Below, piece after piece: positions 26,331-39,439 of a stretch of 64,000 nt of DNA. Each line of letters begins with the position of its first letter. Position 1 is the first letter of the stretch. The notes under the pieces were generated by a model. It searched no databases. It saw only the letters and a program-made list of their open reading frames with translations, and had not been told where the DNA came from. Origin of the DNA: Ostrea edulis (taxonomy: Eukaryota); contig NC_079169.1 of assembly GCF_947568905.1 (NCBI RefSeq), positions 72,974,001 through 73,038,000 on the forward strand, given 5' to 3'. The position numbers and the translations under genes were made by a program.

Positions 26331-29300
26331 TTATAACAACCCGGACCAAACAGATGGGGTGGTCACATAGCCAATATCTGATGTTGTAATGGTGATCTTG
26401 ACTATGTCAGGAGGTGACTGTTGGTCTCCATTTGACTCTGTTTTCCAGCCTGTCGAGATGGACGTCATGGAAAAAACACAGGTCTCTATCTGTTTCGTAG
26501 ACGATTCAGTAGCTTTAAATACTCCACTGATAAGATAGGAAGAGAACTCAAGTATTATTGCAAAGCTGAATTTGCTCAAGAGATTGTCACTGATTCCAAA
26601 TAGACTCAGTAGGTAATTGTAGCAATTATATAACTGATAACGACTTGGTATCTCTTTCTTTCCACTGACATTACAATGTTAGTGATTTGGAGACAACAGA
26701 CTTGTCATCTCCAAGGAACTGATCATTTCATTTGGTGTTGCTCAACAAATCGCCACTGATTCCAAATAGACTCAGTAAGCCACTGTAGCCACTGCAGGGC
26801 TGGTAATGCATTGGTTTCTCTCTCTTTTCACTGACATTAAAATGATTTAATTTGAAGACAACAGATTTGTCATCTCTAAGAAATGGATCACACCAATTGG
26901 TATTGCTTAACAATTTGCCACTGATTCCAGGTAAATTCAGTAGGTCATTATAGCAAATGTATGGCTGATGATGCATTGGGTTCGCTTTCTCTTCACCAAC
27001 ATTAAAATGCTGTGACTTGAAGACAACATACTTGTCATCTTCAAGACATGTAGCACTCCAATTGGTGTTGCTGTCATATCTGGACATCATTCCCCTTGTT
27101 GGGAGTTTGTACTTAGCGGGTGGAAATGGTTCCGGTAACAAGGACTTTATGGGGTACTTCAGTTCTTCGTTGTCTAAACTGCCATAAATATCCGACTCAA
27201 GAGTCCCATTGTTCACCGCTAATCCATACGGGTCAGAGTGTAAATCCAGATAACTTTCCATTGAGTCATTTGCTAACAGGATGGTTGGTTCAGTTGGAAT
27301 GCTATCAAATCCATAGGCACTGATGACGTATACCCTGCTCTTCTGTGGATCTCTGATATACTTCAACTATATTTTCTTGTAACCAGGGCCACCACTGATG
27401 TCTTGGTTGTGTGCTCCTCCATTAACACAGGTCTTTACCACTTCTTTGCTATAGAAATAATTAGGGTCCACACAGTTCAACATCAATCTAGCCTGCTCTG
27501 TATTGAAGGTGGTGCCTTGCTGCTCTAAGAATTTAACATTACTAAAGGTCTCGATTAATACGTTTAATGACTGGAAGTCTACAGACTGAAGGGCTCCTCC
27601 ATGGCTAGAGTCTAAGGAACTGTGTGTAGCACCATATACAATGATAGAACGGGAATTCTTGGTTCCTAGATGTCTCTTTTCAAACTCTTCATTACCATTA
27701 TTTATAGCTAGACAGTTTACTCGCTCTTTAGTTTTCGGACAATTAAACATTAGGTTTTCAAATACATGTAGCACAAAACCTGCATTAACTGGTTCAGACG
27801 CTAGGACAAAAGCTGTATGATCCTGGTCAATTAGGTTAGGAGGAGGAGAGTCTGATTGTGCAAATGTATGCAAGACCTGTCCATTTGGTAGCTGAATACT
27901 GTTGTTTTGGTCAAGCTGAGGGACCAAAGAGAAACACGCTGGATGAGGAGATGGTATACTGGCCAGAGAATGAGAAAGTCTGTGTCTTTCTTTTACGGGT
28001 TGGAACAGATATCTAAATGTTTGTTTACCTCGTCTCTGACTAGAGCTGTGTTCTGACACAGCCAATAGATTGGTGGACCTGGCCCAAGCTGAGTGTAAAC
28101 GTGGGGTAGGCTTAGGCGGAGGCGAAGACATCCCATACAGAGTCATTTTGTTGAGAAGAGTCCTCCTCAAAATACACATGGTTGTAGTTTGATAGTTTCT
28201 CTGGCTTTCGGTTGACCTCGACTTTGCCAGGGAGTGGGGGAGGGGCAGCTTCTGCACCATCCTCTGCCTCTAGGTCCTATCCAAATTGTGAAAGCTCACT
28301 CGGGCTACGGCGACTTTCAGCAGTCTTTATGTACCCAGCATCTCCAGACATTATAGAGGTCAAGTCTGTAACACTGCGTGCATCGTCCTGATCAAATTCA
28401 GATAGAGCTTGCTTGTCCCCCGGGGCACTAATGAGTACGTCTGTACTCCAGGTATTGCTGGTTGTGTCTGATATCCCAGATACATGGTCTTGCCGTGGAA
28501 TGAAGCTGCTACTCACGAATTCCTGCAGCCTGTCATACTGATTCAATTCTGTTGGAGGTACTGAATCAATGGCCAGTCCATTAGTCACTCACTGTAGACT
28601 TTGTTTCCACTCTTTCAATTTCTGCTTTAACTTCAGAATTTCCCAATCTATTAGTGACATCATCACAATTAGGTTTTGGAATTGTATCCAGGTGAGGAAT
28701 TTCTTGGAGAGGCCTCTGAGGATGAGGGGCCTCCTCAACACTCCCTGTCTGTGAGAGTGGCATATTCCTGCCACTGATGTTGGGTGTACCATGCCCACTG
28801 ACTTTTACAGAGATCATGTCAGACATATTTTGGTATCCTGATCCATGGACAACAATTTCTGTTCTGACATCATTCCCGGACACTCTGAGTTCACAGTTTG
28901 TGCTACTTGAGGTGGTATCTGGTTACCAGTGATTGATAGTCAGTTACCTACCTGTTGTTGTGGTTGCTGCTCAAGTTTCTGTTTTTGTGGTCGTGATGAT
29001 TTGGACAATTGCTGAAGTTGCTGTTGTAGTGGTTGTAGTTGCTGAGTTTGTTTTTGCAGTTGGTCACCTCGGTTCAATGACTCAGGTTGTTGAGTCTGGT
29101 ATAATGGGTTACCAGTATGTGACGGTCCATTATTAGCTGGATTTTGCTGCACCATATTACCAGGAATTGGTGATTCAATGACTCAGGTTGTTGAGTCTGG
29201 TATAATGGGTTACCAATATGTGACGGCCCATTATTGGCTGGATTTTGCTGTACCATATTGCTAGGAATTGGATGTACTTGATTACCCGGATTTTGTTGCC

Positions 29301-29488
29301 ATGGGTAACCATGATATGGAACCAGACCAGGTGGATACATGTTAGGTTGAAGCGCCGGATACGGCCTCCAACCAAATGGTGTCCATTGGTTAGCATACAT
29401 AAGTGGCATATGCAAGTATTGTTGTTCAACTGATTGATATGGTATATTAGGGTATACCGGTTGGAGTATGCCGAACTGAGTAGTGTCA
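26331..29488 (-). pseudogene. Decayed long single-exon ORF of unknown family; its first 8 codons lie beyond the Zator at 37053-37078
   Basis: Consecutive minus-strand ORF pieces are separated by in-frame stops (28940, 28589, 28277, 27367, 26728) and frameshifts (about 29165, 28900, 26670). Pro/Gln-rich N-terminus with a 32-aa repeat, a globular-looking centre, and three 55-aa repeats. Confidence 0.65.
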
Positions 29489-29982
29489 GGCCACAATTAA
29501 AAGAATGTTTGTTTCCCCTCCCCCGGGTCTAGTTTTTGAAACTGACCAGGCAGGCAGGTGATATATTTTTTTTTTTTTTAAATTCATATAATTTTATATG
29601 TATTGTCGGAAAAAAAGCAGATCTGTCAAACAGGGCACTGATTGTCTTCAATGCTTAACATCTGGAGAAGAGAACATTTATACTACTATGTTGAGGATTG
29701 GTTGAGCTTCAATGTTTTATGTATTAAAATCCTGGAATGGCTTGCTGGCGTTGAATCTGTATGCTAATATGAATGCTCTGGATGTGTAATTTCTGTTTTC
29801 TTTACTCCGACATTTCTTTAAAAAACATTATTTAAAGAAATAAATGAAAATTTTAAAACAAAAAACATTTATTCTTGACTAGAAATAAGTAGAAACAAAA
29901 ATCATAAACAACATGTTAAAAAGAATGACTTAGAGAGGATGAATATCAGACTAGAATTAACTGATTGTCAGACTGGAATTAA

Positions 29983-32900
29983 CTATTTCTTAATTGGATT
30001 TCTCTTTGGGACTTCCAATTTTTTTGAACGACACAAGTCACAAACTGGCAGCACAACTTTAAAGTTTTTGCACAAGTCCTTGTCCTTTTGGATCTCTGTT
30101 GCAACACAATATGCACATATGTCTTTGCGGCCAACATCCGAGCTGTAGTATGCAAATTCAATGTGACTGGTACATGCAAGCTGGAGTCTTGTGAAAACTT
30201 TTCCATGTAGAACATCCCCTGAAAGTGACCAAAAAAAAAACACTTGTCAGAGAAAAAAATTGATTTTAATGTTTTTGTGCTCTTTATTTTCTTTTTCAGA
30301 TTACCCAAGGTTAAATTCAAAGATTCATCCCTACTTCCATTACTTCAATGATACAAATATTATAAAGATGTTATCATTCAATGACTGTAAATATAAAGGC
30401 TGCCAAAAACATAATTTCCACAGATTGTGCATTTAATACTGAATGTCCTTTTGGAGAGTGAAAAAGGGGAATATGCATGGTAGATGCAAACATGTTTTAT
30501 CCTGCACATGTATATAAGGCCTACAAAAAGCATTTAAATTTTTGAACAATGCAAGGATACAGATTGAATGTGGACAAACACACAAATCCAATTTCTGTTC
30601 TTCTGACATTTTGTCATTTGATTAAAAAGATTTGAACAGTGAATATTCATCTTAGTTCATGTATCCATTGTTTATGATATTGATCATCATGATGATAAAC
30701 AAATGAACATACTTGTGCTTTGGTTCTGTCAGAAATGCCAGTCTTATTTAGTGTCATTTAATCACAATATTGTCAATAAATATACAAACCTTCTGGTGCT
30801 AAAATTGCCCCGCAAGTGTAGTCATATTTATCTGTTGTGTGCTTCAAGGCTCTTAAATCTCGAGGGTTCAACTTCAGCTTAGAATAAATGCATCTAGGTT
30901 TGTCACATTCAGTGCATTTTATTGTAGATCTCACATTCTGGGCAACAAGCATTCTGTTTTCACAACCCTGAAAAAGATTAGATATCAAATGCTAATTAAA
31001 ATATATTCATTGAATGTAGAACAAGACAACCTAGATTGTAATGTTAAACAAAACCTTAAATCCAGGGAGAGGTGTAAATGTTAGAATATTGGAGGACAAA
31101 TTAAGCAAAAATATTGAAATATTAATGCAAGTCATGAAAGATATTAGGATCTAATTTAGCACAACTGTCAGACATATTTGTTACCACTGTGTGAAAATTA
31201 TAATATTGTCTTTCATTTCATATAGCCTAGCAGTTTTGGTCTGTTTTCATAAGATACATGCATCAGTGCCAGTACCAAGTCTGACTGCCCATTTTCCTAT
31301 TGTTGTTTATGTTTGTTTGTTGTCTTTTCTGTGTGTTTGGGATTGTTTGGTTGGTGGAAGGTGGGTGATGTTTGGTTTGGTTTGTGTTTTCTGTCATTGT
31401 TGGAATTCCCTATCATCTCTTTTATATCATAACATTAAATCCATGAATAAAATTCACAGATCTGTGATATCAATGAGGAATATTCTAAATTTACTTACTT
31501 GTTGTTCCTGAGCAACTGCTGCCACTGTTTGATTTGTGGATGAGGGTCTATCTTTCTCTGTGGTGATTGTTCCCAAGACTTCCTCCAGAGATTTATAGTG
31601 TTTTCCAGTGTTATCCATTACCGGGTCTGGCAACCATTGCCATTCTTTAGAAGATGGCGGACAACACTCTGCATCTGAACATCGCCTGATTTGGAACACA
31701 TAGTGGCGTTCTTGACAGTGCTTTCCTGAAAAAGAAATATCACATTTTGTGCAAGGAATAAATAAACATATGGACAATGAATGTAGTATCTGACATAATC
31801 AATCCTGTTTAACTTAATGATATTTTCCACTGACCAAGTATCATATTGCCATACCTTGTCTAGTTGCTGAATAAAGGACCTAAACCAAGAACGAGATGGA
31901 TGGACAAGGGTATTAAATCTAAATGTATATGCCCCTTTCACTTTTGTGTTGCAGATCTGCCAGGACATAAACATATGTAATTTGGAGATATAATTCCATG
32001 TAACCGTACTAAAAGTTGGTAAGCATTGGTGAAGAAACGGAGCAGGTTTTTGAAATCACTTTTGGTAAATAGCTTTGTGTGTTTGTTGCTTACCATATTC
32101 GTTCTTTTTCTAAAGAGAGGATTGAGTTGGAACTGAACATAGAACCAATTCAATAAATATGTCAGTCTCGAGTTTGTGACGTACACATTTTTGTCAGTCG
32201 TTGAATGACTTTTAACTACATTGTCATTCAAATGTACTTTAATGCTACCTTTTTTCTAAAGAACACCAAAAACTACACTAGATTCAAACAACAATTTGAT
32301 GACATTGTATCTTTTTTTCATTCAGCCGCCGATCAACTATGTGTACTAAAAAACTCACGTCTGGGACAGATTTATTGAAACGACTTTACATGTTCTACAC
32401 TAATGTTTTTTTTCTCCAATTCTCAGTACTCAGTATAAGAAAAGGACATTTTTTTTCAATATTGTGGAGCATAATACCTACCAATGAAATCCTTAAAGCT
32501 TTTAGCTTTGTTCATATGGGTCTGTTGGTAGTTCCCAATGCTAATAGTGGGGTCAATCAAAGTTACACTGGCTTCCGTCATCTCTACATCGATGTCATCT
32601 GCTGCCGGAAAACTTTGAAAGGGTTTCCCTTTCAGTTGGACACGCTTTGCACGTTCTTCTAACAGGTTAATCATAGGCCTCACAGATTCGATCCACTTAG
32701 TTTTTAGACCATCAACTTTCTCCGCCTTGCGTCTTATTTCACCCATTCCATTGCATGACCTAATAACTTGTTCAATGTCTGAGGTAGATTCCTCCCTGGA
32801 CAAAGCCGTGTTCTGGAAAGCTATATTTAGCAAGGACATAATTCTTTCTGCCGGATTAGCCCAGGAATGTCCTGGGGCTGTTCGACAAGCGACTAAGAAT

Positions 32901-35900
32901 TCTAAGCCAAGCTGTTTAAACAAAATAATCAAAGATAATTTGACGCTGTTGTAAGTTGTACGATGGTCAGGCCCTCCATCTGTGTAAAGAAACAGAGCAG
33001 GTTTTTTGTCATTAACATCAACTTGATCAAGAATGTTTTTCAATTCTGTAGCGTGTCTGAAAGGAGAACTAGGCTGAAATGTGCTGTCTTTCATCGTTAA
33101 AGCAACCTGACCTCTATAAAATGACTCTGATATGTCCTCCGGTATGTCAACAAATAATGCAACTGATGGAGTAAGGGAACCTTTGCTAGAGACATCGTGA
33201 TCTAGACAGGATAACGCCGAATCAACTGGCATAATAGATTTTTTTCCACGCACTCCTGATGATATATGGACACCAGGCTCTCCAAAATCAACCTTGGACT
33301 TGTCGTCCATACATACAAATGTAACTTTGTCTCTAAACTTTATTGCATACTGTCTCAACATTTTGAATATACTAGCGCAGTAATGTTCATCCTGATGACT
33401 GGCACGCAGTTGTCTGGTTTGAACTTTCATTTTTAAAGGTACGCGGCCTTTATATAACTTTGCGACATTTGCATGAGCATTTTTTGGTACAAAAGCCAAA
33501 AGGACTGTTGATTCACTAGGAATTGGCACATCGTCAGGAAGTTTAGCCTTAACTTGATTGATAAGATCTCTTACAGACAGATATTTTGAGATATGTTCAA
33601 TGCCGTGTCTCCTTTCATCTGCTGCCTTTAATTCCTCTAGATCGTGTTCCAATGTAGAGAAAAACACATCAAAAGTGTCACTCGGACGCCCCTTGTTCAG
33701 ATGGCGGAGGTCCACTATAAGTTCTGGATCTGAAGCCATCACAGCTGTACGCATACGTTGATCAATCGCTGGGTTTTGATCGGTAGTGGCATCGCCTGTC
33801 AATGTAGCATAGATTGACCGTAGTATGTGGGGTGGTATTGTAACACCCGATATTTTTTCATATATGGAATAAAATTCTAGACGCATTTTTCTTGTATGGT
33901 ATTCGGGCAACTTAGGACGGAGATTGTGTATAACCTGGTTATCCGTCAAATGCAAATCTTTTGTAGACATACTATCCTGAACTTTCCAAAAAAAGGTCAA
34001 TGCCCCTAAGCCAGCACCTGGGTCATACTGGAGCACATGCAAATCAACAGATAGTGCAATACTGTTTAGAAATTTATATCTCTGTGAACTATTCATTTCA
34101 ATTTCAGGACCAAAAGCTGTTTCATCAAAAAACAGCGGTTCAAAAAATGCCATCTCTGAAAGCGCAAGATCTAATTTGGAATATCTGTTTAATACTTCGT
34201 TTGTTTTTTCGACATGCTGAATAGACATATGGGTATCTACTTGCCGGACAGGATGCATCTTTTCCTGGCGCATTTTTTGGTTTTGATTGGCATTATCTAA
34301 GTACTCAGAATAAGAATCTAAGGAAATTGCCAAAAGATGCAATTCATCTTTGATATTCCAATGGTTTGCATATGGTTTGGAGGCTACCCTGAATACGCAT
34401 TGGCCATGTAATTTAAGTTCTTTTGCATTTAATGAAGGTTTTTTCTCCTTTTTCTTCTTGAAGTCATTGATGCCATCATACTGAAGAAACCTGAAAAATA
34501 AATATGGGTAATTGAATAGCATGCTTAATTACAAATGTACATGTACTTTGCATAGTTTCCTTAGTATGTGGAAACTATGAACCTTAACAAAGACGTTATT
34601 ACCACAGTGTGACAGACAGACAGACAAGGGTAACATTTATATATTCCCTCCACATACATGGTCCAATAGGCCATACAAATGAATGAAGATCATAGCTAGC
34701 ATAAATGCCAAGTAAATGACAATGAAAGGTGATGGTCTTTAATTGAATACATGTGTTGTCTGCATAATAGTTTGTAAATGCCATTACATGTATTGCCATT
34801 ATCTGCACCCTGTCCCCCAAAATGCTGGTATTTATAAACCTGTTTAACCCTACTGCTAGCTTTTGTTAGTGTCGGTACCAAGTCCACTTATCCCCGAGTT
34901 TCTATCGTTATAAATGTTTGTAATTTGTCTTGATTTGTGTTTTTTGTTTTCGGAGTTATTTGGTGATATGTGATTGAATTGTCTGTCATTATTGTGTTTT
35001 CTGCTATCTTTCCGTTTTTCATTGAAATAGAAGGTACACATTAATAGTACCGGTATTTATACGTGAAAGTTCCATCAAAACCCCACGTGAAGTGGTTAAG
35101 CCAGAGTAACAGACAAATGAAAAGTGTGACGGACAACAACAATGACACAAGACCACTCAGGTATGCTGCCTTACACTACATGTGCTGGTGTCAGACACAT
35201 GCAGACATGAATCCAATACCTTGCAGGAATTCCTTGAACATCTGGCATATGTACAGCTCGCTCCTGAATTGTCCCCATATTTCCACTTAAGTACCACACA
35301 GCATTGGTCAATGGCATGATCACTTGGTCACTAATGGCTTTGTCCGTCATTACAACTGGAAACTTGTCTTCAAATTCCACAAACATGTTCACTATCCCGT
35401 TGTACAGTTTTTGTTTAGCTGTAATAAAATTTACATTCTGACACACTGAGTATACATGTACTTCAAATTAAATGCAAATATTATCAATTGTGAGTTATCA
35501 ATGAATACATGTGTCGCCTGCATGGCCTTATAAATGTTGAAAAAAATTAAAGTAAAAAAAATCAAAGTAAGTAAACAGCAGGAAGTTGAAGTGTGACAGA
35601 TCTGAATTCGCATCCCACGAAATTGGACTTTTCATACTGAATCTGTATACCAAATTTCAGCCACTAGTTTCTGAGAACACCAAAAAGTGTGGCTGACAAT
35701 AACAACCCAACTGGAAATGATAAAAGGGTCAGATCCCTATATGTCGCAACACACTGGGTATACACTGAGGGGACACAATAAGTGAATGCTAAAATAGTCA
35801 AGGATGTAAACATATCGATCACTATCACACACTTGATACCCAGAATTTGACACGCCAGGGTATTTAAAAATTGAAGCCACAAATGAGGGGGTGGACAAGG

Positions 35901-36852
35901 GGGCGGGAACCCGGGAGTAAGGGGGCGGGAACAGGAAGTTAGGGGGAGGGAACTGGGAGCTAACGGGGGCGGGAACCGGGATTAGCGTAAGGCGGGAGTA
36001 AAATCAAAATTGGTGACAAGCCAAAAAAAAAAACGTCAAAGGGAGTAGATGGGTCGGGAACTAGGAGTCCATGGGTAGGGAACCGGGAGTCAATGGGGCG
36101 TTAACTGGGAGTCGAGGGGGTGGGAACCGGGAATTGGAGACACCCCTGTCCACCCCCTCACAAATGTATAGCTGCGACCCTTTAAAATGTGAAAAAATGA
36201 CAAAGTCCAATGTTGAAAAAAATTTGGGCAGCACTTCCCCTAGGAATTTACCGTTTTTACACCCCCTACCATAAATTTCCCCAGACCAAAAGTTTGGGAA
36301 CATTGAAGAAAGAAATGAAATGGTGTGGGACAGACTCATTTATAACTTTAAGACATGAGCCATACACCATCTCAAACCTACTTGATAGAAATATAATAAT
36401 GCATATAAATTACCTGTAAATCTGGGAGAGGCTTCATCAATCTTTTGAGGGAGCTTTGTCAGTGTGCTGGACTTTCTCATCAAAACATCGAAAGCTGTAG
36501 GACATGTAGGAGGATTTTGACCTTTTGGTACATTGTTATTTGGTTCTAAGTCTCTTACCACGTCAAATTGTACATATTTCAATTTTTTATCAAAGTTGTG
36601 AACCACTTGTATCTGTTCTTCAAAATGTGGCTCAAAAGTTACACCGTTGGCAAGTTTGTCCGACACGGTGACAGTTACTTCGTCCAACTTGTCTATGTTA
36701 TGGTCGCCGTCCGCTGTCAAATCATTCAAAACCTCATTCCATGTACAGTGTTTGGAGAAACTGCAGAGTCTGTTGACTATTATGGGCACAACTTTAGATG
36801 TGTGTTTGTATTTTATCTTTACAGTAGACGACAACGCTATTCTGTCACCCAT
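29983..36852 (-). CDS. Zator transposase, 6 exons, 1095 aa, with Cys-rich C-terminal domain
   Basis: Exons 36852-36414, 35418-35220, 34490-32482, 31725-31499, 30967-30790 and 30218-29983; all GT-AG, phases consistent, total 3288 nt. Motifs CMDDKSK, DHD, TDGGPDHR and APGHSWANPAERIMSLLN match the TP36/Zator catalytic pattern; CxxC pairs lie in exons 5-6. Confidence 0.85.
35885..36159. mobile_element. GC-rich MITE nested in transposase intron 1
   Basis: GAGGGGGTGGACAAGGGG ... CCCCTGTCCACCCCCTC TIR; ACAAAT duplicated on both sides; interior has repeated GGGCGGGAAC motifs. Confidence 0.75.
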
Positions 36853-39439
36853 TTTTTCAAGTATCGATAAATCCCGGTAACTTCCGAAAATAGCAGAAGT
36901 AACGTCTAGAACCGACACGGAGCGGACACGTTTTTTTACGGAAATAAAAAAAAAAAAACATCGCAATTTTTTGGCAAAAAAACTTTTGACCCGGGCCCTT
37001 TTTTTTGACCCGGTCGGGGCGAGGGGAAACAAACATATTTTTATTTTTGGCCTCAGGTAGAATGTACTTATTTGACATAACTTCACTGAATGTTGACTAA
37101 TTTTGAATAGGTTGACCTGGCTTATACATGTGACCTTGCATGTTATTACTTTAATAGTGACCCTGTATAGGTTGACTTAGCAAAATATGACTATACAACT
37201 AATTTACTAGATGATGCTTGTACAATCATCCGTATGGTAGTATACCGTTGCTCTAGTAACCCATAGTTTCCCAATTCACATCCACAGTTGTAGACAACAG
37301 TTGAAGATTACAACAAGTATTTATTTAAATTTTTCAACAATTTCTCCAAAACACGTTTTTTAAACCAAGTTTAGACATGAACGCTATTACACCGAGGATA
37401 TAATTTGAAATTTTGTTTGTTATGAAACCCCATTACAATCCGATCCGTATTAAAATCCCCTACTACACATTTTTGGGTTTCGTCAACATTTGTCTTCCAG
37501 TCCCCGACCAAGCGCCATGTTAATTTGATGCGAGGTACGTTCAGAATGATCATGCGAGAACGAACGGTTTGAGGGAACAAACGCTTTATTCGAGAACGAA
37601 CGGTTTACAGATGGGAACGGAGCGGTTTGAACTAAACCTACACTAAATCTACAAGCGTATTTACACCACAGACTACATGTTTTTGGTTTTGTCCATCAAT
37701 GTTAAGTGTGGAGCGAATCGGAACATGTTCTACAGTGTATTCCTCCAAAGAGTTGATCCACAATTGTTGTTTTGTCATTCTCTGTTATTAATATGTTGAC
37801 GGTGCTACCGTTTGAGCGAGCGCAGCTTCATGTATGTACATATTTTGTAATGCTCATGCTTTGATCAGATTCAATTTAAACAATATCTATTTCCCAAATA
37901 CTCATGACATGAATTTTCTCCCAGGGTTTTATATTAAAAATCATTAAAACGTGTATACATGAATGTGATTGGAATATTTTTATGTTATATATACATTTTA
38001 TTTCTGCTGCCTTCACTGTGAGTTGCTTAACCTTTGATGCACGACTTGTTCTGAACTATATGCTCTCAGCAATTGACTGAATAAAATTGCAACATCATTG
38101 ATTTAAACCCCTCTCCACTGTTGTTGTGAGGATACATTAATTAAGATTAATTCACAAAACTAGAATTAATTAATGATTTTTCAGTAGTTAATATCAAATG
38201 GCATGGTTGGTTATCATGAAGGGGGGGGGGGGGGTCGTGGTCTGGATTACTGGACATGTTTAAAGACAATGGATTCAAGCATTCATTATTTTTAGTCGCC
38301 AAAAAAACCAAACAAACAAACAAAAAACAAAAAAAAAACCCAATGATTTTTAAAAAATGTTTTCAATCCGACCGAATTCCATCGATTTTTTGTAATTTTT
38401 TTTAAATAGTACTAATTCAGTATCTGTGCTCCCTCACACGATGAATAAAACATTCCTATTGAGAATTTAGTATTTTAATAAGATTTGTGGTTTGCAGTCG
38501 ATTATACACAATTTGTATCCGATGCCATCTTACGTAAATGTTTACGTATATTCAATATTGTCCCGGTAGTATGACTTTTACAAATGGAAATATCAAGTAC
38601 GTATTTAGATCCGCCACTGTCAGTCTTATTATGACGTCGTCAAAACGTAGACATGACGTCACGCATCATCTTAGCCTGCCTTTCATAAACATTGCACTTC
38701 GTTAAACATTTCACCTAATGGTACACTGGATTTTGAAGCTAAGAGGACACAAAATTAGAATGATAATCCACGTAAGTTCACAATCATATTCCAAGGTGTG
38801 ACTTTGCGAGATCTCAGCCATTTTTGACAAGGGACTTCTGGGATTGGCGTAAAAAAAATTTCCTTGTTAGAGGTTCAAACTCCCCGTCGAGGCCTCATTA
38901 CGTCACCTACGAATAGACCTCTCCTATGTGACGCAGCACAATATACAGATTTGTATATTGTGAGTCCGCGATTATCACGCAGGCAAATAACACTAAAGAA
39001 GTAGTTCGCAGTTAAAAGTTTGAAAATATTGATATTAAGAGCATTAATATAAAAGTATGGATTTTATTTTAAACATAAAATGATCAAAAGATCATTAAAA
39101 AGTAGGGAGACTCTGTTCAAATTATTGTGTAAAGTAATGAACTTGATGTTTACGTTCTTGTTTTGAAAGTTGTTTACGTTTGACGTTATGTTTTTTCGTC
39201 ATTCTACAGTGACGTCACAATATACGCGGCCTAAGAAATCGCTATCCCATAATGCCTAAGTGGAAGAGTTTGGTTTGTGAGCAAACGAACTCTGGTGGAA
39301 GTTTGGTTAGAGGTTTAGATTTAGCTCGGATTATTTCCCGCGCTCTAGTCATTAGAGCTCGCAGTACGAGCCAGCGCTTCGGCTCGCTATTATGTAAACC
39401 TTTTCGTTTGTTCTGAGGAAGTGACGATTTGACAATCTG

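What the first reader, a model, noticed from the sequence alone, without database searches (positions are those of the whole stretch)
29489..37052. Apparently intact, intron-containing Zator transposon with a 1095-aa transposase and extra Zn-binding tail
Seen: both TIRs, a perfect 3-bp TSD, and a six-exon ORF with canonical splice sites, consistent phases and no stops; the DDE-type motifs are intact; exons 4-6 add CxC/CxxC clusters (CTECDKPRC, CAYC, CDLC). Known: Zator transposases are related to bacterial TP36, have GG termini and 3-bp (typically TWA) TSDs, and were described as roughly 600-800 aa. Inferred: a potentially active autonomous element of an expanded-architecture subgroup with a TCA target. 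Zator transposition has, to my knowledge, not been reconstituted, so this is a candidate for functional study.
Basis: partly seen in the sequence, partly recalled or inferred. Interest (0 to 1): 0.75.

Follow-up and report, generated by a model that had tools for sequence, protein, structure and literature searches.

The report
Intact oyster Zator DNA transposon
This is a complete 7.6-kb cut-and-paste DNA transposon of the little-studied Zator group in an oyster genome, with an unbroken 1095-residue transposase gene and many young shortened copies; it is a good but not unusual candidate for a first functional test of this group.

Summary
At 29489-37052 (gene on the minus strand) there are 36-nt terminal inverted repeats (86% alike), a perfect TCA duplication on both sides, and six exons with GT..AG introns that give a stop-free 1095-aa protein.

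The protein itself misses Pfam PF07592. Relatives 47-48% identical to it pass PF07592 and NCBIfam ISAzo13, and those relatives sit inside the family tree. The predicted catalytic domain is an RNase H-like DDE fold. It is closest to Mos1 mariner among solved structures and to bacterial ISAzo13 clusters among predicted ones. With the 3-bp duplication, this fits Zator.

Whole-genome reads of two oysters show the first 1.38 kb at roughly 10-20 times the depth of the interior. The flanks of those copies differ. A uniform 2.3-kb internal-deletion derivative joins 30866 to 36132. So the family has moved recently and the long copy is low-copy.

A contig from a related species is spliced at introns 3, 4 and 5. 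Introns 1 and 2 rest on homology only.

The cysteine-rich tail is not special to this copy: it is conserved across the family in molluscs, hemichordates and fungi. It has no named family and no clear solved fold.

Verdict: new member of a known kind. The scan also noted another Zator-like element elsewhere in this genome.

The parts
29486..29488 (.). Target-site duplication TCA, left copy
   Evidence: Read directly. Boundary confirmed by where reads of other copies stop matching.
37053..37055 (.). Target-site duplication TCA, right copy
   Evidence: Read directly.
29489..29524 (+). Terminal inverted repeat at the 3' end of the gene; starts GGCCACAATTAAAAG
   Evidence: A second family of copies shares only this stretch (loose end behind 29525).
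37017..37052 (-). Terminal inverted repeat at the 5' end of the gene; 31 of 36 positions identical to the other arm
36414..36852 (-). Exon 1 (ATG at 36852-36850; residues 1-146 plus 1 nt), donor GTAATT
   Evidence: Collinear with the N-termini of P0008, P0013 and others. Not tested with RNA.
35220..35418 (-). Exon 2 (residues about 147-213)
   Evidence: Not tested with RNA.
32482..34490 (-). Exon 3 (residues 214-882). Helical N-terminal region plus RNase H-like DDE domain: D608/D609 at 33307-33302, D717 at 32980-32978, E761 at 32848-32846
   Evidence: A 1991-nt contig of run X19 covers 32482-34492, that is, this exon plus two intron bases at its 5' edge.
31499..31725 (-). Exon 4: first Cys/His cluster (H885, C886, C898, C903, C904, H925) and the WLPDP motif
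   Evidence: Joints 31724(+1 nt)->32482 and 30967->31499 in the X19 contig.
30790..30967 (-). Exon 5: second Cys cluster (C976, C979, C1010; CxxCxKPR ... DYxCG)
29983..30218 (-). Exon 6 with stop TAG at 29985-29983: third Cys cluster (C1033, C1052, C1055, C1077, C1080)
   Evidence: Joint about 30218->30789 in the X19 contig.
30867..36131 (.). Stretch missing from the abundant 2.3-kb non-autonomous derivative (junction 30866|36132, GGG microhomology)
   Evidence: Loose end behind 30866 in 16+19 reads, agreement 0.98-0.99. Its consensus matches 36132-36161 exactly. The depth drop is, table 2.
35886..36158 (.). Nested 273-bp MITE-like insert in intron 1, with 8-bp duplication CACAAATG (35878-35885 and 36159-36166) and internal 21-22-nt tandem repeats
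   Evidence: (pair I11). Logan contigs of other individuals break at 36158.

Best explanation
This is an autonomous cut-and-paste DNA transposon of the Zator superfamily, the eukaryotic relatives of bacterial ISAzo13/TP36 insertion sequences and distant kin of IS630-Tc1-mariner. It is inserted in an oyster chromosome.

The six-exon gene encodes a 1095-aa transposase.

Inferred mechanism:
- The mostly helical N-terminal half recognises the 36-nt terminal inverted repeats.
- The RNase H-like domain (D608/D609, D717, E761) cuts the element out and joins it to a target through cuts staggered by 3 nt, which gives the 3-bp duplication. The target is probably TNA.
- The conserved C-terminal domain, about 220 aa with 14 conserved Cys/His (enough for about three zinc sites), serves assembly or target/chromatin binding.

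Shown here: the anatomy, the fold, the family links, the multi-copy ends with different flanks, and a uniform internal-deletion derivative.

Inferred: that this copy's protein is active today, that it mobilises the 2.3-kb derivative in trans, and the role of the tail.
For: Anatomy: TIRs, TSD and intact ORF.

Family links: more than 180 homologues. Three of 25 pass PF07592 above its gathering score (45.4, 33.6 and 32.0 bits against 26.9), on the stretch that aligns to the D..D..E region. Four of 25 match NF033519 ISAzo13. Those members are nested inside the family tree.

Fold: the AF2 model has pLDDT 82.5. D395/D396 lie at the end of beta1, D504 lies after beta4, and E548 lies on alpha4 (exon-3 numbering). 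Mos1 mariner is the best solved match: Foldseek E 8e-5 with probability 1.0, and VIA Z 10.1 over 190 aligned residues at rmsd 4.0. Bacterial PF07592 clusters are the nearest named predicted folds, with TM by target 0.58 and 0.56.

Literature: Zator pairs with ISAzo13 and both make 3-bp TSDs (PMC10045372, PMC5718144). Amphioxus Zator-1 has 33-bp TIRs and TAA/TTA duplications (PMC12905397). Zator occurs in bivalves and Glomeromycotina (PMC10294476, PMC5751038), which matches the taxa of the homologues.

Mobility: depth is about 30-45 over 29400-30799 against about 1-3 over 31400-34999. In run X23, 68 junction reads have unlike flanks. Of its 522 laid reads, 324 are at least 99% identical. The deletion junction is uniform.

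Constraint: full-length copies in other individuals are 99.7% identical, and all three exon-3 differences are synonymous. The tail exons are as conserved as the core: 67, 63 and 51% identity to P0008, against 60%.

Splicing: introns 3-5 are removed in an X19 contig.
Against: The protein itself has no PF07592 or NCBIfam match, even at E up to 10.

No reference Zator sequence (Repbase, Bao 2009) was available, so clustering with named Zators was not tested.

The RNA evidence comes from a related species, in a run whose RNA nature is only a guess. That contig carries 11- and 9-nt gaps in exon 3, so that copy may be defective. In the host species, the one RNA run shows only unspliced pieces.

The TIRs differ at 5 of 36 positions.

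Neither WGS run shows the window's own alleles at 29886 and 29975, in 33 and 30 reads (run X23) and 30 and 33 reads (run X24).

No insertion polymorphism at this locus could be shown.
Confidence: 0.8

Rival explanations
1. It is a Zator element that looks intact but no longer moves. It would be a recently silenced or crippled last long copy, and the 2.3-kb derivatives were amplified earlier by another master copy.
For: The full-length interior is only about single-copy. The two TIR arms differ at 5 of 36 positions. No spliced transcript was seen in the host species. Nearly all multi-copy reads carry variants that the window copy lacks: 29886 T>C, 29975 G>A and a 4-nt deletion at 29852.
Against: There is no stop or frameshift in 3288 nt across six exons. 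All family-invariant residues are kept. Differences between individuals in exon 3 are synonymous only. Most derivative reads are at least 99% identical, so mobilisation was recent.
Confidence: 0.3
2. It belongs to a separate, so far unnamed lineage of ISAzo13/IS630-like eukaryotic transposons, distinguished by the roughly 1000-aa protein and the C-terminal Cys-rich domain, rather than to Zator as defined in Repbase.
For: The protein itself misses PF07592. Most homologues, 22 of 25, also miss it. The tail has no Pfam family and no clear solved fold. Support for Zator monophyly is only 73% in one broad study (10.1101/2021.09.26.461848).
Against: The members that do hit PF07592 are nested within the family. 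The 3-bp TSD, the 33-37-nt TIRs and the host range (bivalves, Glomeromycotina) match published Zator (PMC12905397, PMC10294476, PMC5751038).
Confidence: 0.12
3. It is a domesticated transposase gene of the host, not a mobile element.
For: The ORF is long, intact, intron-containing and conserved at the protein level.
Against: It lies between TIRs with a TSD. Its ends are multi-copy with many different flanks, and a deletion derivative exists. It interrupts another open reading frame.
Confidence: 0.02

Closest known systems
Zator superfamily of eukaryotic DNA transposons (Bao et al. 2009; e.g. Zator-1 of Branchiostoma, PMC12905397)
   Same: 3-bp target-site duplication. TIRs of about 33-37 nt. 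A DDE transposase whose named relatives are ISAzo13/TP36. Occurrence in bivalves and Glomeromycotina.
   Different: The duplication here is TCA rather than TAA/TTA. The protein has 1095 aa from six exons, with a conserved tail of about 220 aa rich in Cys. Whether reference Zators have that tail could not be checked.
Bacterial ISAzo13 family transposases (Pfam PF07592 DDE_Tnp_ISAZ013; NCBIfam NF033519)
   Same: The catalytic DDE domain. Relatives pass both models, and the predicted fold aligns over 256-283 residues (TM by target 0.56-0.58). 3-bp duplications are reported for both (PMC10045372).
   Different: The bacterial proteins have about 320-400 aa, no introns and no Cys-rich tail. The oyster protein itself scores below the models' reporting limits.
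Mos1 mariner / SETMAR (Metnase) transposase catalytic domain (PDB 3hos, 3hot, 3k9j)
   Same: Best solved structural match of the catalytic domain (Z 9-10, 170-190 residues aligned), consistent with the published grouping of Zator near IS630-Tc1-mariner.
   Different: About 10-12% sequence identity. Mariner makes TA (2-bp) duplications, has a DDD triad, and is a protein of about 345 aa without the tail.
CW-type, ZZ-type and HPV E7 CR3 zinc modules (e.g. PDB 5yvx, 4qq4, 5yp8, 6iwd)
   Same: Small Cys-ligand folds that align weakly to the middle and last modules of the tail. The motif CxxCxKPR ... DYxC recalls CxxCxKWR ... WxC of CW fingers (from memory).
   Different: Z is only 2.2-3.5, below what chance arrangements give. 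There is no sequence-level match. This is a lead only.

Membership tests
Zator superfamily | Transposase homologous to bacterial ISAzo13/TP36 transposases | tested here: met
   Met at family level, not by the protein alone. The query itself has no hit. P0048, P0072 and P0077 (47-48% identical; E 1e-151 to 1e-136 to the query) pass the PF07592 gathering score, and 4 of 25 match NF033519. They nest inside the family tree. The fold search puts PF07592 clusters as the nearest named models.
Zator superfamily | 3-bp target-site duplication | tested here: met
   TCA on both sides. The terminus is fixed at 29489 by read clipping places.
Zator superfamily | Terminal inverted repeats of a few tens of nt | tested here: met
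   36 nt, 31 identical, against 33 nt in amphioxus Zator-1 (PMC12905397).
Zator superfamily | DDE triad on an RNase H-like fold | tested here: met
   The acidic residues are invariant or nearly so (D395/D396 invariant, D504 and E548 in at least 90% of 77 sequences) and lie on beta1, after beta4 and on alpha4 of the AF2 model. Mos1 Z is about 10.
Zator superfamily | Clusters with reference Zator transposases rather than with another superfamily | not testable with these tools
   No Repbase or Bao 2009 sequences are on hand, and the paper is not held.
   This copy has TCA. Of 62 junction reads in run X23, 51 share at least the final A and 24 share TCA. The consensus of the rest ends in TA before that A. 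This suggests TNA, but the table gives consensus only.
Active autonomous transposon | Intact coding capacity and ends | tested here: met
Active autonomous transposon | Young copies at different sites, and non-autonomous derivatives | tested here: met
   depth ratio about 10-20. In X23, 324 of 522 reads are at least 99% alike. Flanks are unlike one another. The junction 30866|36132 is confirmed.
Active autonomous transposon | Correctly spliced mRNA in the host | tested here: inconclusive
   Introns 3-5 are spliced in a contig of a related species (run X19, labelled 'RNA?'). The host RNA run X17 shows only unspliced bits.
Active autonomous transposon | Presence/absence polymorphism of this insertion; transposition in an assay | not testable with these tools
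   There was only one read-laying run, and empty-site reads are not resolvable from its tables. The assay is a bench experiment.

The most novel reading that the evidence does not exclude
The conserved C-terminal domain is a new three-zinc module of Zator-type transposases whose middle finger is CW-like. It would steer integration by reading chromatin or a target-bound factor. On this reading, the oyster copy would be a natural, active transposase with which Zator transposition could be reconstituted for the first time.
Probability: 0.15. Interest if true: 0.6.

Novelty: new member of a known kind. Interest (0 to 1): 0.4.

Why it matters
Zator is one of the least studied cut-and-paste superfamilies. 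In the papers I could search, no transposition assay or structure was found. A 2026 study of an amphioxus sex-determining region flanked by Zator-1 states that definitive evidence of transposition is lacking (PMC12905397).

An intact, intron-mapped transposase, its exact ends and a natural 2.3-kb non-autonomous partner provide the material for such a test.

The family-wide Cys-rich tail is an unannotated domain found in molluscs, hemichordates, sponges and glomeromycete fungi.

Against this, intact relatives are common: more than 180 homologues, including annotated 1095-1112-aa proteins in other bivalves. Zator is already reported in bivalves. So the find is useful rather than surprising.

Tried and rejected
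- Direct Pfam and NCBIfam scans of all six exon products gave no significant family.
- A profile of the family against PDB sequences gave nothing. The same for the tail gave nothing.
- A Pfam scan of 42 tails gave nothing.
- tblastn of P0048 against plasmids, meant to fetch a bacterial ISAzo13 for a profile-profile test, found no match.
- A scan of bacterial and archaeal genomes with the family alignment gave three loci in 'MAGs'. They are close relatives (35-40% identical). One has 42% GC, and two have few long ORFs. They show no PF07592 hit. I take them for eukaryotic DNA binned with bacteria, not a bacterial link.
- The look-up of encoding contigs for the exon-3 ORF gave only internal contigs without flanks.
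- Bao et al. 2009 could not be read, and the bivalve TE paper's supplements do not list Zator.
- Flanking ORFs have no Pfam family, so the interrupted gene stays unidentified.
- The large representative-protein search was not run.
- The domesticated-gene reading was rejected on the read evidence.
Full report
**1. What is in the sequence**

The stretch 29489-37052 is bounded by inverted repeats. The repeat scan reports arms 29488-29524 and 37017-37053, 86% complementary. Without the one flanking base on each side these are 36-nt arms, both starting GGCCA, with 31 identical positions. Their common 16-mer occurs nowhere else in the 64 kb, against 0.05 expected. TCA stands directly outside both arms, at 29486-29488 and 37053-37055.

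On the minus strand, a script joined six exons: 36852-36414, 35418-35220, 34490-32482, 31725-31499, 30967-30790 and 30218-29983. All five introns are GT..AG and the phases are consistent. The product is 3288 nt, a 1095-aa protein with a single terminal stop.

**2. Is the gene model real?**

The model is collinear from first to last residue with annotated proteins of other bivalves, including Sinanodonta woodiana (1095 aa) and Pecten maximus (1112 aa). It is also collinear with proteins of Ptychodera and of the glomeromycete Ambispora. There are no gaps at the five exon joins.

Reads and contigs were laid on 29000-34999, because the limit is 6000 letters. One 760-nt contig of run X19 comes from a related species and is about 95% identical. 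It skips 30967-to-31499 exactly (intron 4). It skips 31724(+1 nt)-to-32482 (intron 3). It skips about 30218-to-30789 (intron 5, with ten letters re-placed by the aligner). A 1991-nt contig covers 32482-34492, that is, exon 3 plus two intron bases.

Caveats:
- X19 is only guessed to be RNA.
- Its exon-3 contig has 11- and 9-nt gaps, so that copy may be broken.
- The host-species RNA run X17 shows only unspliced pieces.
- Introns 1 and 2 were outside the laid stretch.

**3. What family is the protein?**

None of the six exon products matches Pfam or NCBIfam. The word search found more than 180 homologues. They come from bivalves, gastropods, a hemichordate, a starfish and a glomeromycete fungus.

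- Three homologues, 47-48% identical to the query, pass Pfam PF07592 (DDE_Tnp_ISAZ013) above its gathering score. The matched stretch aligns to the query's D..D..E region.
- Four of 25 match NCBIfam NF033519, the ISAzo13 family transposase model.
- In a maximum-likelihood tree of the catalytic region, these members sit inside the family, beside a Lottia protein, not at its edge.
- The language-model search lists ISAzo13/PF07592 as the nearest named clusters, at 0.81. That score is a lead only.

**4. Fold**

An AlphaFold2 model of exon 3 (77-sequence alignment, mean pLDDT 82.5) has the canonical RNase H-like order. In exon-3 numbering:
- D395/D396 lie at the end of beta1.
- D504 lies just after beta4.
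- E548 lies on the helix after beta5.

In full-length numbering these are D608/D609, D717 and E761, with 43 residues between the last two.

Foldseek ranks Mos1 mariner first (E 8e-5, probability 1.0). VIA-align gives Mos1 Z 10.1 (190 aligned, rmsd 4.0). Metnase scores about 9.3 and retroviral integrases about 9. In the ESM Atlas the nearest named models are bacterial PF07592 clusters (TM by target 0.58 and 0.56; 283 and 256 residues aligned).

This agrees with the literature:
- Zator pairs with ISAzo13/TP36, and both make 3-bp duplications (PMC10045372, PMC5718144).
- Zator groups near IS630-Tc1-mariner (PMC7386202).
- Amphioxus Zator-1 has 33-bp TIRs and TAA/TTA duplications (PMC12905397).
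- Zator is reported in bivalves and in Glomeromycotina (PMC10294476, PMC5751038).

I therefore file the element under Zator. The reservation is that no reference Zator sequence was available for a direct tree.

**5. Is it mobile?**

Two raw whole-genome runs of the host species (X23 and X24, about 6% of each read) were laid.

- Depth is about 30-45 over 29400-30799.
- Depth falls at 30866.
- Depth is about 1-3 over 31400-34999, close to what a single-copy sequence should have if the genome is of usual oyster size (my assumption).
- At 30866, 16 and 19 reads continue with one uniform sequence (agreement 0.98-0.99). That sequence is exactly 36132-36161 of the window.

So there is an abundant internal-deletion derivative of 2299 bp. 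It lacks 30867-36131 and has GGG microhomology at the junction, as abortive gap repair after excision would leave.

At the left terminus, 68 reads of X23 run into unlike flanks at 29486, 29488, 29489 and 29497. This means many insertion sites. Of 522 laid reads in X23, 324 are at least 99% identical. The family has therefore transposed recently.

A further set of reads leaves the element just behind the TIR, at 29525, with another uniform sequence. That is a second non-autonomous family sharing only the TIR.

Contigs of the long copy from other individuals are 99.7% identical over 5.3 kb. Their three exon-3 differences are all synonymous.

Two things could not be shown: that this insertion is polymorphic, and that this copy is the active master. 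Neither WGS run shows the window's alleles at 29886 and 29975.

**6. The target**

This copy has TCA. Among the clipped reads of X23, 24 share TCA, 27 share only the final A (their consensus ends in TA before it), and 11 share none. This suggests TNA rather than TCA (inference from summary tables).

**7. The tail**

The last roughly 220 residues (exons 4-6) hold 14 Cys/His positions conserved in 11 to 14 of 14 full-length homologues:
- H885, C886, C898, C903, C904, H925
- C976, C979, C1010, C1033
- C1052, C1055, C1077, C1080

A 42-sequence alignment of tails keeps them, and the three window exons are 67, 63 and 51% identical to the Sinanodonta protein. The tail is thus a family feature under constraint, not an extra of this copy.

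Because the window's tail is split over three exons, I folded the tail of P0008 (60% identical to the query over exon 3). The model is confident (pLDDT 91).

It has no Pfam family, no sequence match to solved structures and no Foldseek match in the PDB. Only weak VIA matches appear, to small zinc modules (HPV E7 CR3, CW fingers of SDG8 and MORC3, a ZZ domain), at Z 2.2-3.5. The nearest Atlas models are unnamed clusters from Mucoromycota and Porifera, with a weak zf-CW row.

Zinc binding and any role in assembly or targeting are inferred.

**8. Surroundings**

Removing the element and one TCA joins ATG 37078 in frame to the ORF that runs down from 29488 (…ILP|DTTQFG…). This agrees with another first-stage note (s1-287637). 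The ORFs below have no Pfam family, and the flank has somewhat raised depth and a polymorphic 101-bp tandem repeat. I leave open whether this is a host gene.

**9. Verdict**

This is an intact autonomous Zator-superfamily element with a recently mobilised deletion derivative. It is a new member of a known kind. It is a practical candidate for the first functional study of Zator, and it shows a conserved, unannotated Cys-rich transposase domain.

No N stretch was touched.

Noticed in passing
window 35886-36158: A 273-bp MITE-like insert lies in intron 1. It has 8-bp direct repeats CACAAATG on both sides, termini AGGGGGTGGACA…, and internal 21-22-nt GGGCGGGAAC-type tandem repeats. The 2.3-kb derivative keeps its last 27 nt, so the insert predates the deletion.
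   Followed up: partly
window 29489-29525 (reads): Whole-genome reads (16 in X23; 7+7 in X24) leave the element right after the TIR with a uniform sequence ACCCTAAATTTCAGAGGAAGGTCGG that is absent from the window. This is a second non-autonomous family sharing only the TIR.
   Followed up: partly
window 29073-29271: A 101-bp tandem repeat (2 copies, 93% alike) lies in the flanking ORF. Reads of both individuals show a 'goes back 99' joint, i.e. alleles with an extra unit.
   Followed up: no
window 37078 and 29488 downwards (minus strand): The insertion interrupts an open frame 8 codons after an ATG; the empty site would read MSNKYILPDTTQFGILQ…. The downstream ORFs (29074-29487, 28581-28883, 28277-28588, 27367-28260, 26728-27366) have no Pfam family and lie in different frames.
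   Followed up: partly
L003 (Sedimenticola MAG, 3.9-kb contig), L004 (Stappiaceae MAG 'chromosome 82'), L005 (Nitrospirales MAG): Records filed as bacterial MAGs encode close relatives (35-40% identical) of this eukaryotic transposase. L004 has 42% GC, and L004 and L005 have few long ORFs. This is probably host or eukaryotic DNA binned with bacteria.
   Followed up: partly
window 29852, 29886, 29975: Nearly all multi-copy reads differ from the window copy: a 4-nt deletion at 29852 (24/24 and 26/29 reads), T>C at 29886 and G>A at 29975 (all reads). The window's long copy carries minority or private alleles in its 3' untranslated part.
   Followed up: no
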